In this document: positions 5,284 through 5,725 of the stretch, one piece after another
Numbering within the stretch: the stretch's first letter is position 1
How the letters are laid out: each line of letters opens with the position of its first letter
DNA from: Cycas panzhihuaensis
Lineage: Eukaryota > Plantae > Cycadophyta
NCBI GenBank assembly: GCA_023213395.1
Contig: CM041465.1
Location: forward strand, 227,361,741 to 227,425,740
Length of the DNA stretch: 64,000 nt
Direction: 5' to 3'
Translations under genes and position numbers: made by a program
Notes under the pieces: model-generated
The model's input: the letters and a program-made list of their open reading frames with translations, nothing else
What the model was told of the DNA's origin: nothing
Databases searched by the model: none

Positions 5284-5725
5284 ATGGTTTGTCAATGCCC
5301 ATGTAAATCAATTTTCCTCCAATCTTCATCCTTATTTGACTGGGAGGGTTTAGAAAAATCTGCGGCCTATCTCTATCCTTATCCGTAGAATTGTATGCAT
5401 CCATTTTCCATCTATCCATACACATATACTCAGGCACTCCAAATCTACTAGCACTCCAATTATCAAACACATCCCTTTGATTTTAGTCATATAAATTAGA
5501 GAGAATAAATCTCTTACTAGATGCCTAGTTATCAGCCTCATTTGCTCTAAACAATCAATCATACTCGCTAGCCCTAAAAATTTTTCTATCATTACCAAAA
5601 CCACTGGAGGGCCTCCAGTTTGGACCCCATTGCCCGTCGCCATTTTATGTATTACAAACCCTTCATTCAATTAATCCTTTACATCAGAATTCATCCATAC
5701 CACCAGGTGGACCCTTATTTCTCCA
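5284..5725 (-). pseudogene. eIF4B: Captured, internally deleted fragment of plant translation initiation factor eIF4B, antisense to the host element
   Basis: The minus frame reads RNKGPPGG...NGDGQWGPNWRPSSGFGNDRKIFRASEYD*LFRANEADN*ASSKRF...DRDRPQIFLNPPS. After frameshifts it continues DEDWRKIDL (5330-5304) and GIDKP. These match, in order, plant eIF4B motifs as I recall them: DGSW..RRP.GGFDDDRR..SRVSDF.QPSRADEVDNW, ERPRLVL.P, and KDWRK+DLELEHR.+DRP. Confidence 0.75.

What the first reader, a model, noticed from the sequence alone, without database searches (positions are those of the whole stretch)
5284..5725. LTR element has captured an antisense fragment of host translation factor eIF4B
Seen: four collinear motifs on the minus strand (DGQW..RPSSGFGNDR..RASEYD..RANEADNW; DRDRPQIFLNPP; DWRKIDL; GIDKP), spread across stops and frameshifts, so the ORF track shows only pieces. 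Known (from memory of plant eIF4B): SRADEVDNW repeats, RPRLVL.P and DWRK+DLELEHR.+DRP occur in this order. The fragment skips a long stretch between LNPP and DWRKID, consistent with template switching during reverse transcription. Inference: transcripts from the LTR would be antisense to eIF4B mRNA. The family could therefore yield siRNAs against a core translation gene, or tie its own silencing to a cost for the host. This is the strongest candidate for something undescribed in the window.
Basis: partly seen in the sequence, partly recalled or inferred. Interest (0 to 1): 0.82.

Follow-up and report, generated by a model that had tools for sequence, protein, structure and literature searches.

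The report
Decayed backwards eIF4B fragment in retrotransposon
A small, defective Copia-type jumping gene in a gymnosperm-like plant genome carries a badly decayed, backwards-facing piece of the host translation factor eIF4B; this is a real but ordinary case of gene-fragment capture, and this copy is very unlikely to regulate the host gene.

Summary
Real plant eIF4B genes, fetched by a DNA pattern and confirmed by Pfam PF06273, match the window at one place only: 5644-5330 on the minus strand. The best match is Ginkgo Gb_28173, residues 139-261, E 2.8e-13. Of 120 eIF4B proteins, 59 hit that place at E<1e-3; none of 120 reversed or 120 shuffled controls did.

The fragment lies inside a 4.9-kb non-autonomous Copia-type LTR element:
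- 223-bp LTRs, with 13 differences in a 224-bp comparison
- a tRNA-iMet primer site and a TTATA target duplication
- a gag remnant only

It sits backwards in a 3.36-kb leader between primer site and gag.

It is heavily decayed:
- three stops, at least one frameshift and several deletions
- 47 of 101 aligned residues identical to the Ginkgo protein
- 8 of 19 residues changed at positions invariant across seed plants

This is far more change than the LTRs have accumulated, so the capture probably predates this copy.

The siRNA idea is not supported: identical residue runs are at most 4, plus one of 7. The concept itself is already published.

Earlier follow-ups of this scan described the same habit, antisense cargo in Copia leaders, elsewhere in this genome.

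The parts
4311..4315 (.). Target-site duplication TTATA, 5' copy
   Evidence: Read directly from the sequence; identical to 9229-9233.
4316..4538 (+). 5' LTR, 223 bp, TG...CA
   Evidence: Self-BLAST pair at 94.2% identity; alignment A1; 13 mismatches in a 224-bp comparison, 12 of them transitions, K(JC)=0.060.
4539..4550 (+). Primer-binding site TGGTATCAGAGC (initiator tRNA-Met type)
   Evidence: Read directly after the LTR's CA end. That this 12-mer is the usual plant Copia/TRIM primer site is established knowledge; it was not checked against a tRNA here.
4551..5283 (.). Leader or cargo of unknown origin
   Evidence: No Pfam or PDB match for any stop-free piece on either strand.
5285..5298 (-). 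GIDKP, possible remnant of eIF4B G-V-E/D-R
   Evidence: Follows DWRKIDL..H at the spacing expected if about 4 residues were lost. Too short to be significant on its own. Homology does not continue beyond it.
5304..5339 (-). eIF4B DWRKIDL motif in a shifted frame
   Evidence: 7/7 identical to Ginkgo Gb_28173 residues 371-377; E 0.15 in the 2.5-kb search. The alternative match to the first repeat, residues 296-306, has E 0.8. DNA is 17/20 identical to the conifer mRNA L008.
5330..5644 (-). Core eIF4B fragment, equivalent to Gb_28173 residues 139-261
   Evidence: tblastn E 2.8e-13 and 64 bits; E 3e-8 to L008. A home-built eIF4B exon-1 HMM gives i-E 8e-6. Stops are TGA at 5555-5557, TAG at 5525-5527 and TAA at 5483-5485.
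5645..5713 (-). Possible upstream extension of the fragment (GPPGGMDEF against G.LGGGFRDY)
   Evidence: Four angiosperm eIF4B queries extend their tblastn alignment to 5704. The Ginkgo query does not pick this up, so it is tentative.
5714..7906 (.). Rest of the long leader, unassigned and AT-rich from about 6600
   Evidence: No Pfam or PDB hits. No terminal inverted repeats that would mark a nested DNA transposon.
7907..8503 (+). Copia-type gag remnant (198-aa ORF); no zinc knuckle, no pol
   Evidence: Pfam Retrotran_gag_2 E 0.0027 and DUF4219 E 0.0059, in the canonical order but below the gathering score. No CCHC motif in any plus frame from 7600 to 9005. The word search found no relatives.
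8997..9005 (+). Short polypurine tract AAGGGTGAG
   Evidence: Read directly; it abuts the 3' LTR.
9006..9228 (+). 3' LTR
9229..9233 (.). Target-site duplication TTATA, 3' copy

Best explanation
Window 4316-9228 is one insertion of a 4.9-kb non-autonomous Copia-type LTR retrotransposon. It keeps only a gag remnant and has an unusually long 3.36-kb leader between primer-binding site and gag.

About 0.75 kb into that leader, in reverse orientation, lies an internal piece of the coding sequence of plant-specific eIF4B, of the Gb_28173/'GQWG' paralogue type. It covers roughly residues 139-261, perhaps from about 112, plus the DWRKIDL motif.

The piece is a dead passenger, broken by three stops, a frameshift and several deletions.

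Inferred steps:
- It was picked up by an ancestor of this copy well before this insertion. The most likely route is reverse transcriptase switching onto a co-packaged host transcript; less likely is a DNA-level insertion into a master copy.
- It has since been copied along with the element and has decayed neutrally under methylation-driven transitions.
- It has no present function. An LTR-driven transcript would be antisense to eIF4B mRNA only in a formal sense, because too little sequence identity is left.
For: eIF4B origin:
- tblastn E 2.8e-13 (Ginkgo) and 3e-8 (conifer mRNA), with all significant hits at one locus. Reversed and shuffled controls are empty.
- The reference proteins were verified as PF06273, with E from 6e-77 down to 1.5e-184.

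Inside one LTR element:
- The LTR pair, TG..CA ends, primer site, polypurine tract and identical 5-bp TTATA duplications are all present.
- The gag hits lie on the opposite strand to the fragment.
- No pol and no long ORFs are present.

Decay:
- There are 3 stops and a frameshift.
- 47 of 101 aligned residues are identical, and 25 alignment columns are gaps.
- 8 of 19 residues invariant across seed plants are changed.

Capture older than this insertion:
- The LTRs differ at K=0.060, so each site has had about 0.03 changes since insertion, or about 11 substitutions in 360 nt.
- The loss of invariant residues implies roughly 0.2 or more changes per site (the conversion is my inference).

Other points:
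- No inverted repeats flank the fragment.
- It has no poly(A) tract and is internal at both ends, so it is not a LINE-type retrocopy.
- 12 of 13 LTR differences are transitions, and CpG observed/expected is 0.16-0.36, which fits methylated, silenced DNA.
Against: - The host's own eIF4B genes could not be compared. All divergence figures therefore rest on proxies: the Ginkgo protein and columns invariant across seed plants.
- No second copy of the family was available, so inheritance of the cargo through retrotransposition is inferred from divergence alone. A fragment copied from an already old pseudogene would look the same.
- The gag assignment rests on two Pfam hits below the gathering score.
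- Template switching as the route leaves no testable trace here. The standard minus-strand switch onto an mRNA would predict sense orientation, not antisense.
Confidence: 0.8

Rival explanations
1. One reading: LTR-driven antisense transcripts or siRNAs from this family act on eIF4B mRNA, or they tie silencing of the element to a cost for the host.
For: The geometry is right. The fragment is antisense to the element's gag and 5' LTR. The concept has published support for other captures (bioRxiv 10.1101/777037; PMC13477047; PMC13317346). One 7-residue identical run, DWRKIDL, could in principle hide a match of about 21 nt.
Against: Against the closest eIF4B, identical residue runs are at most 4, so at most about 16 nt, everywhere except DWRKIDL. 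Overall identity is 47 of 101 aligned residues, with many indels. The element is decayed and CpG-depleted, so it is probably silent. There are no expression or small-RNA data. Even if true, this would be an instance of a published idea.
Confidence: 0.04
2. Private, post-integration event: the eIF4B piece, already a decayed pseudogene fragment, was pasted into this one integrated copy. Possible routes are filler DNA at a repaired break, or a nested, now unrecognisable, gene-carrying DNA transposon. On this reading it was never retrotransposed.
For: Orientation is then a coin toss, which fits a single antisense fragment. The leader is 3.36 kb long and mostly unassignable, so it could be a patchwork of later insertions.
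Against: No inverted repeats or duplications flank the fragment. This reading needs an old eIF4B pseudogene as a donor. Earlier follow-ups in the same genome report the same layout, antisense host fragments in Copia leaders, in several unrelated places (not tested here), which argues for a family habit.
Confidence: 0.13
3. Chance or low-complexity resemblance, with no eIF4B ancestry.
For: Single pieces give nothing in Pfam, PDB, the word search or the big HMMER search. eIF4B is rich in G/R/D/S and has low complexity.
Against: E is 2.8e-13 with composition-adjusted statistics. 59 of 120 real queries are significant, against 0 of 240 reversed or shuffled queries. Lineage-specific motifs are shared with one paralogue type: GQWG.N.RP and RP.I.L.
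Confidence: 0.01

Closest known systems
Gene-fragment capture (transduction) by plant LTR retrotransposons, e.g. maize Bs1 and the rice/sorghum surveys (cited in PMC7264820 and PMC13317346)
   Same: A host coding fragment sits between the LTRs of a defective element. The element has lost pol and must be mobilised in trans. The proposed route is reverse-transcriptase template switching between co-packaged RNAs.
   Different: [quoted passage not shown] Here the fragment is antisense. It also lies in the leader upstream of gag, not in place of pol. It is a non-coding wreck, not part of a chimeric ORF.
Genome-wide TE capture of exon fragments in gymnosperms (PMC13477047, 2026)
   Same: The host group is the same; Ginkgo is among the 12 gymnosperms surveyed. 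Captures there are ancient and come mostly from first and second exons. This fragment maps to exon 1 of the angiosperm eIF4B genes I fetched. The same paper discusses donor-gene 'epigenetic conflict'.
   Different: That survey does not report orientation (the word does not occur in the paper) or position within LTR elements.
Epigenetic-conflict / siRNA-reservoir model (Muyle et al., bioRxiv 10.1101/777037; reviewed in PMC13317346)
   Different: That model needs enough identity for siRNA cross-matching. This copy has too little, judged by proxy.
Conserved antisense additional ORFs of plant LTR elements (Grande gene23, RIRE2, Retand; PMC7264820)
   Same: Antisense material inside an LTR retrotransposon.
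   Different: Those are conserved ORFs between pol and the 3' LTR, with no host homologue. This is a broken host-gene fragment in the leader.

Membership tests
Plant-specific eIF4B (Pfam PF06273) | Match to the Pfam eIF-4B model at or above its gathering score | tested here: not met
   No piece (24-106 aa) gave any Pfam hit, even at E<=10. A joined read-through could not be sent to that tool.
Plant-specific eIF4B (Pfam PF06273) | Significant, collinear similarity to verified family members | tested here: met
   tblastn E 2.8e-13 to Gb_28173. 59 of 120 members reach E<1e-3 at the same locus, and the controls are empty. The members were verified as PF06273.
Plant-specific eIF4B (Pfam PF06273) | Intact reading frame covering the protein | tested here: not met
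   There are three in-frame stops, a frameshift and several deletions. At most about residues 112-386 of roughly 541 are represented. It is a fragment derived from the family, not a gene.
LTR retrotransposon, Copia (Ty1) type | Two direct LTRs with TG..CA ends, flanked by a 5-bp target-site duplication | tested here: met
   LTRs at 4316-4538 and 9006-9228 are 94% identical. TTATA lies on both sides.
LTR retrotransposon, Copia (Ty1) type | Primer-binding site next to the 5' LTR and polypurine tract next to the 3' LTR | tested here: met
   TGGTATCAGAGC at 4539-4550 and AAGGGTGAG at 8997-9005. Pairing with the initiator tRNA-Met is from established knowledge, not tested against a tRNA.
LTR retrotransposon, Copia (Ty1) type | Copia-type gag | tested here: inconclusive
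   Retrotran_gag_2 E 0.0027 and DUF4219 E 0.0059 occur in the canonical order, but both are below the gathering score. There is no CCHC knuckle and no word-search relatives.
LTR retrotransposon, Copia (Ty1) type | pol (protease, integrase, reverse transcriptase, RNase H) in Copia order | tested here: not met
   There is no ORF of 120 aa or more other than gag, and no Pfam hit in the interior. The element is therefore non-autonomous.
TE-captured gene fragment propagated by the TE family | Several family copies share the fragment with the same junctions | not testable with these tools
   The host genome cannot be searched, and there is no second copy in the window. The only indirect support is that fragment divergence far exceeds LTR divergence.
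TE-derived antisense/siRNA regulator of a host gene | Stretches of about 21 nt or more of near-perfect complementarity to the target mRNA | tested here: inconclusive
   This is a proxy only. Against the Ginkgo protein the identical runs are at most 4 residues, plus DWRKIDL at 7.
TE-derived antisense/siRNA regulator of a host gene | Transcription of the element and small RNAs that map to both loci | not testable with these tools
   No expression or small-RNA data are on hand.

The most novel reading that the evidence does not exclude
The antisense polarity and the position behind the primer-binding site may not be accidents. They could be the signature of a specific capture route in this Copia lineage: plus-strand DNA synthesis, just after the second strand transfer, switches onto co-packaged host mRNAs and back. 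That would write reverse-complement copies of host transcripts into the leader. The family would then be a systematic recorder of host, possibly germline, transcripts in antisense. When the captures were young, it would also have been a source of antisense RNA against essential genes such as eIF4B.
Probability: 0.15. Interest if true: 0.6.

Novelty: new member of a known kind. Interest (0 to 1): 0.25.

Why it matters
On its own this matters little. It adds eIF4B to the very long list of host genes with pieces inside gymnosperm transposons, and it shows that this copy is too decayed to act on its donor.

Its value is as one more data point for a pattern that this scan has met repeatedly in the same genome: host-gene pieces lying backwards in the leaders of gag-only Copia elements. 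Published reviews say transduced sequences are usually in sense orientation. A genome-wide census showing a strong antisense and leader bias would therefore point to an undescribed capture route, or to selection on orientation.

Tried and rejected
1. Pfam on the five main pieces found nothing. PDB phmmer found nothing. The word search with the 68-aa piece had no candidates.

All were long proteins with repeated domains or units: Ig, SRCR/LDL-receptor, Big_2 and one unnamed repeat protein. Their scores are inflated by summed repeats, and none is eIF4B.

3. The ESM Atlas look-alikes were uninformative.

4. A full-text search for the motif strings gave no relevant paper.

5. That fetched 28 plant eIF4B loci.

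6. My first ORF extraction extended downstream in the wrong frame and wrongly suggested an intron right after EHR. One search corrected this: L008 is a spliced mRNA, and the genomic loci have the intron after ..VDR.

7. The intron test is uninformative, because the matched part lies within exon 1 of the fetched genes. DNA alignment shows no homology past the exon-1 end.

8. I searched the leader for further cargo, using 53 pieces in Pfam and 3 in PDB, and found nothing credible.

9. The gag word search found nothing.

10. A search for nested-transposon inverted repeats found none. Rfam found none.

I recomputed the same numbers from files.

13. A joined read-through of the broken fragment was not sent to any public-database tool. 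It was used only inside scripts, with X at the stops.

Full report
**What is in the sequence**

- In one frame (5644-5330): DGQWGPNWRPSSGFGNDRK, RASEYD then a TGA stop, RANEADN then a TAG stop where eIF4B has W, a TAA stop, ..RDVFDNWSAS.., MDRW.., DRDRPQIFLNPPSQ.
- In a shifted frame (5339-5304): DEDWRKIDL.
- Back in the first frame (5298-5285): GIDKP.

The window has 31.6% G+C and no N.

**Testing the eIF4B claim**

The standard routes failed because every stop-free piece is short and decayed.
- Pfam gave no hit, PDB none, and the word search had no candidate.

No tool could hand me a plant eIF4B by name.
- My own estimate is that about 0.5 matches were expected by chance. 28 loci came back.
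- All 28 read as eIF4B around the match. The five I scanned matched Pfam PF06273, with E from 6e-77 down to 1.5e-184.

One locus, L008, is a spliced conifer-like mRNA with a 566-aa ORF. Using it as the query returned 120 further eIF4B proteins, including two from Ginkgo, two from Cryptomeria, one from Taxus and one from Araucaria.

**Result**

tblastn of these proteins against the whole 64-kb window puts the best hit of nearly every query at 5644-5330 on the minus strand.
- E is 2.8e-13 (64 bits) for Ginkgo Gb_28173 residues 139-261, and 3e-8 for L008.
- 97 of 102 HSPs with E<=1 fall in 5200-5800.
- 59 of 120 real proteins reach E<1e-3, against 0 of 120 reversed and 0 of 120 shuffled.
- An HMM built from twelve of the fetched exon-1 sequences finds the same stretch at i-E 8e-6.

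The fragment belongs to the paralogue type shared by Gb_28173, L008 and a Cryptomeria protein, marked by the GQWG.N.RP motif. It shares the RP.I.L variant with Ginkgo alone.

**Extent and state of the fragment**

- The secure part is Gb_28173 residues 139-261. Four angiosperm queries extend it to about residue 105 (window 5704), so it may reach about 5713.
- DWRKIDL matches the second DWRK repeat 7/7 (residues 371-377, E 0.15 in a 2.5-kb search). It can also be aligned to the first repeat (residues 296-306, E 0.8). The 'long skip' is therefore about 104 or about 34 residues.
- The main alignment already holds 25 gap columns in at least five blocks. Deletional decay explains the skip as well as template switching does.
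- Identity is 47 of 101 aligned residues.
- The longest identical runs are GQWG (4 residues) and DWRKIDL (7).
- Of 19 columns invariant in seven seed-plant eIF4Bs, the fragment has changed 8.
- No homology continues past GIDKP, at either protein or DNA level.

In the genomic eIF4B loci the first intron lies right after ..HRxVDR. My first reading of those ORF ends had a frame bug, which one search corrected.

**The carrier**

Self-BLAST finds a 224-bp direct repeat pair at 94.2% identity. Read in detail, the element is laid out as follows:
- LTRs at 4316-4538 and 9006-9228, with TG..CA ends.
- Primer-binding site TGGTATCAGAGC at 4539-4550.
- Polypurine tract AAGGGTGAG at 8997-9005.
- Identical TTATA duplications at 4311-4315 and 9229-9233, which mark a single insertion.
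- One sizeable ORF (7907-8503, plus strand) with weak hits, in the canonical order, to DUF4219 and the Copia gag family.
- No zinc knuckle and no pol.

This is a 4.9-kb non-autonomous, gag-only Copia-type element, and its leader is 3.36 kb long. The eIF4B piece sits in that leader on the opposite strand. The rest of the leader matches nothing I could test. No inverted repeats suggest a nested DNA transposon.

**Timing**

The LTRs differ at 13 of 224 sites, 12 of them transitions, giving K=0.060.
- By my inference this means about 2 to 14 million years, depending on the rate assumed.
- About 0.03 changes per site have therefore accumulated in this copy since insertion.
- The fragment has lost 42% of residues that are invariant across seed plants, which needs roughly 0.2 or more changes per site.

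Most of the decay therefore predates this insertion. Either the fragment was captured in an ancestral element and retrotransposed along with it, or it was copied from an already old pseudogene. Only other family copies can decide between these, and they are out of reach of these tools.

**Mechanism**

- Shown: a host coding fragment, internal at both ends and without poly(A), sits antisense between the primer site and gag.
- Inferred: it was picked up by reverse-transcriptase template switching between co-packaged RNAs. This is the route given in the 2026 review PMC13317346.
- The usual minus-strand switch predicts sense orientation. Antisense needs one of three things: an antisense host transcript, a plus-strand-synthesis switch onto mRNA, or a DNA-level insertion with a 50% chance of either orientation.
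- One fragment cannot tell these apart.
- Selection could also favour antisense cargo, because it does not bring sense-strand splice and poly(A) signals into the element's genomic RNA. This is my inference.

**The regulatory idea**

LTR-driven RNA would be formally antisense to eIF4B mRNA. With identical residue runs of at most 4, so at most about 16 nt, and a single run of 7, siRNA-grade complementarity is unlikely for this copy.

The idea itself is published:
- captured fragments as siRNA reservoirs;
- conflict when the donor gene is essential;
- 'camouflage' of the TE.

The sources are bioRxiv 10.1101/777037 and PMC13317346. PMC13477047 treats gymnosperms specifically. It reports about 400,000 captured coding fragments per gymnosperm genome and a preference for first and second exons.

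**What is unusual**

[quoted passage not shown] The gymnosperm survey does not mention orientation. The antisense, leader-located layout is therefore less described.

Earlier follow-ups of this scan reported the same layout on other DNA of this genome (s1-822535, s1-831717, s1-822540, s1-822539). I did not test those reports. This finding adds one more instance.

**Verdict**

The regulatory role is not supported. This is a new member of a known kind, of low to moderate interest.

Noticed in passing
window 59362-61818: A (TA)n microsatellite of about 2.46 kb (1,228 copies, 86% matches). It produces all the long spurious ORFs in the window. Earlier notes link (TA)n blocks to Tat retrotransposon accessory cassettes in this genome.
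   Followed up: partly
window 13649-14035/51562-51948; 16999-17488/21548-22041; 26431-26716/32633-32919; 32923-33231/46050-46357; 34452-34748/40228-40520: Five further direct-repeat pairs, 77-92% identical, which look like LTR pairs of older, nested retrotransposons. The window is a stack of decayed LTR elements, with CpG observed/expected of 0.16.
   Followed up: no
window 4551-5283 and 5714-7906: About 2.9 kb of the element's leader has no recognisable origin. Pieces such as 4669-4797(-) and 4634-4744(-) read as protein-like and may be further antisense host fragments, too decayed or too short for Pfam or PDB.
   Followed up: partly
L008:82-1779 (metagenome contig Ga0310119_102003): A complete spliced eIF4B mRNA. 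It is 74-84% identical over its full length to three unnamed Logan-assembly proteins, with a fourth partial one at 99%, and 59% identical to Ginkgo Gb_28173. It is probably conifer RNA inside an environmental metatranscriptome.
   Followed up: partly
L001-L028: All 28 metagenome matches to the 35-nt degenerate DWRKxDxExEHR pattern are plant eIF4B genes, so plant-host DNA and RNA is common in these metagenome collections. The genomic ones share an intron directly after ..HRxVDR.
   Followed up: partly
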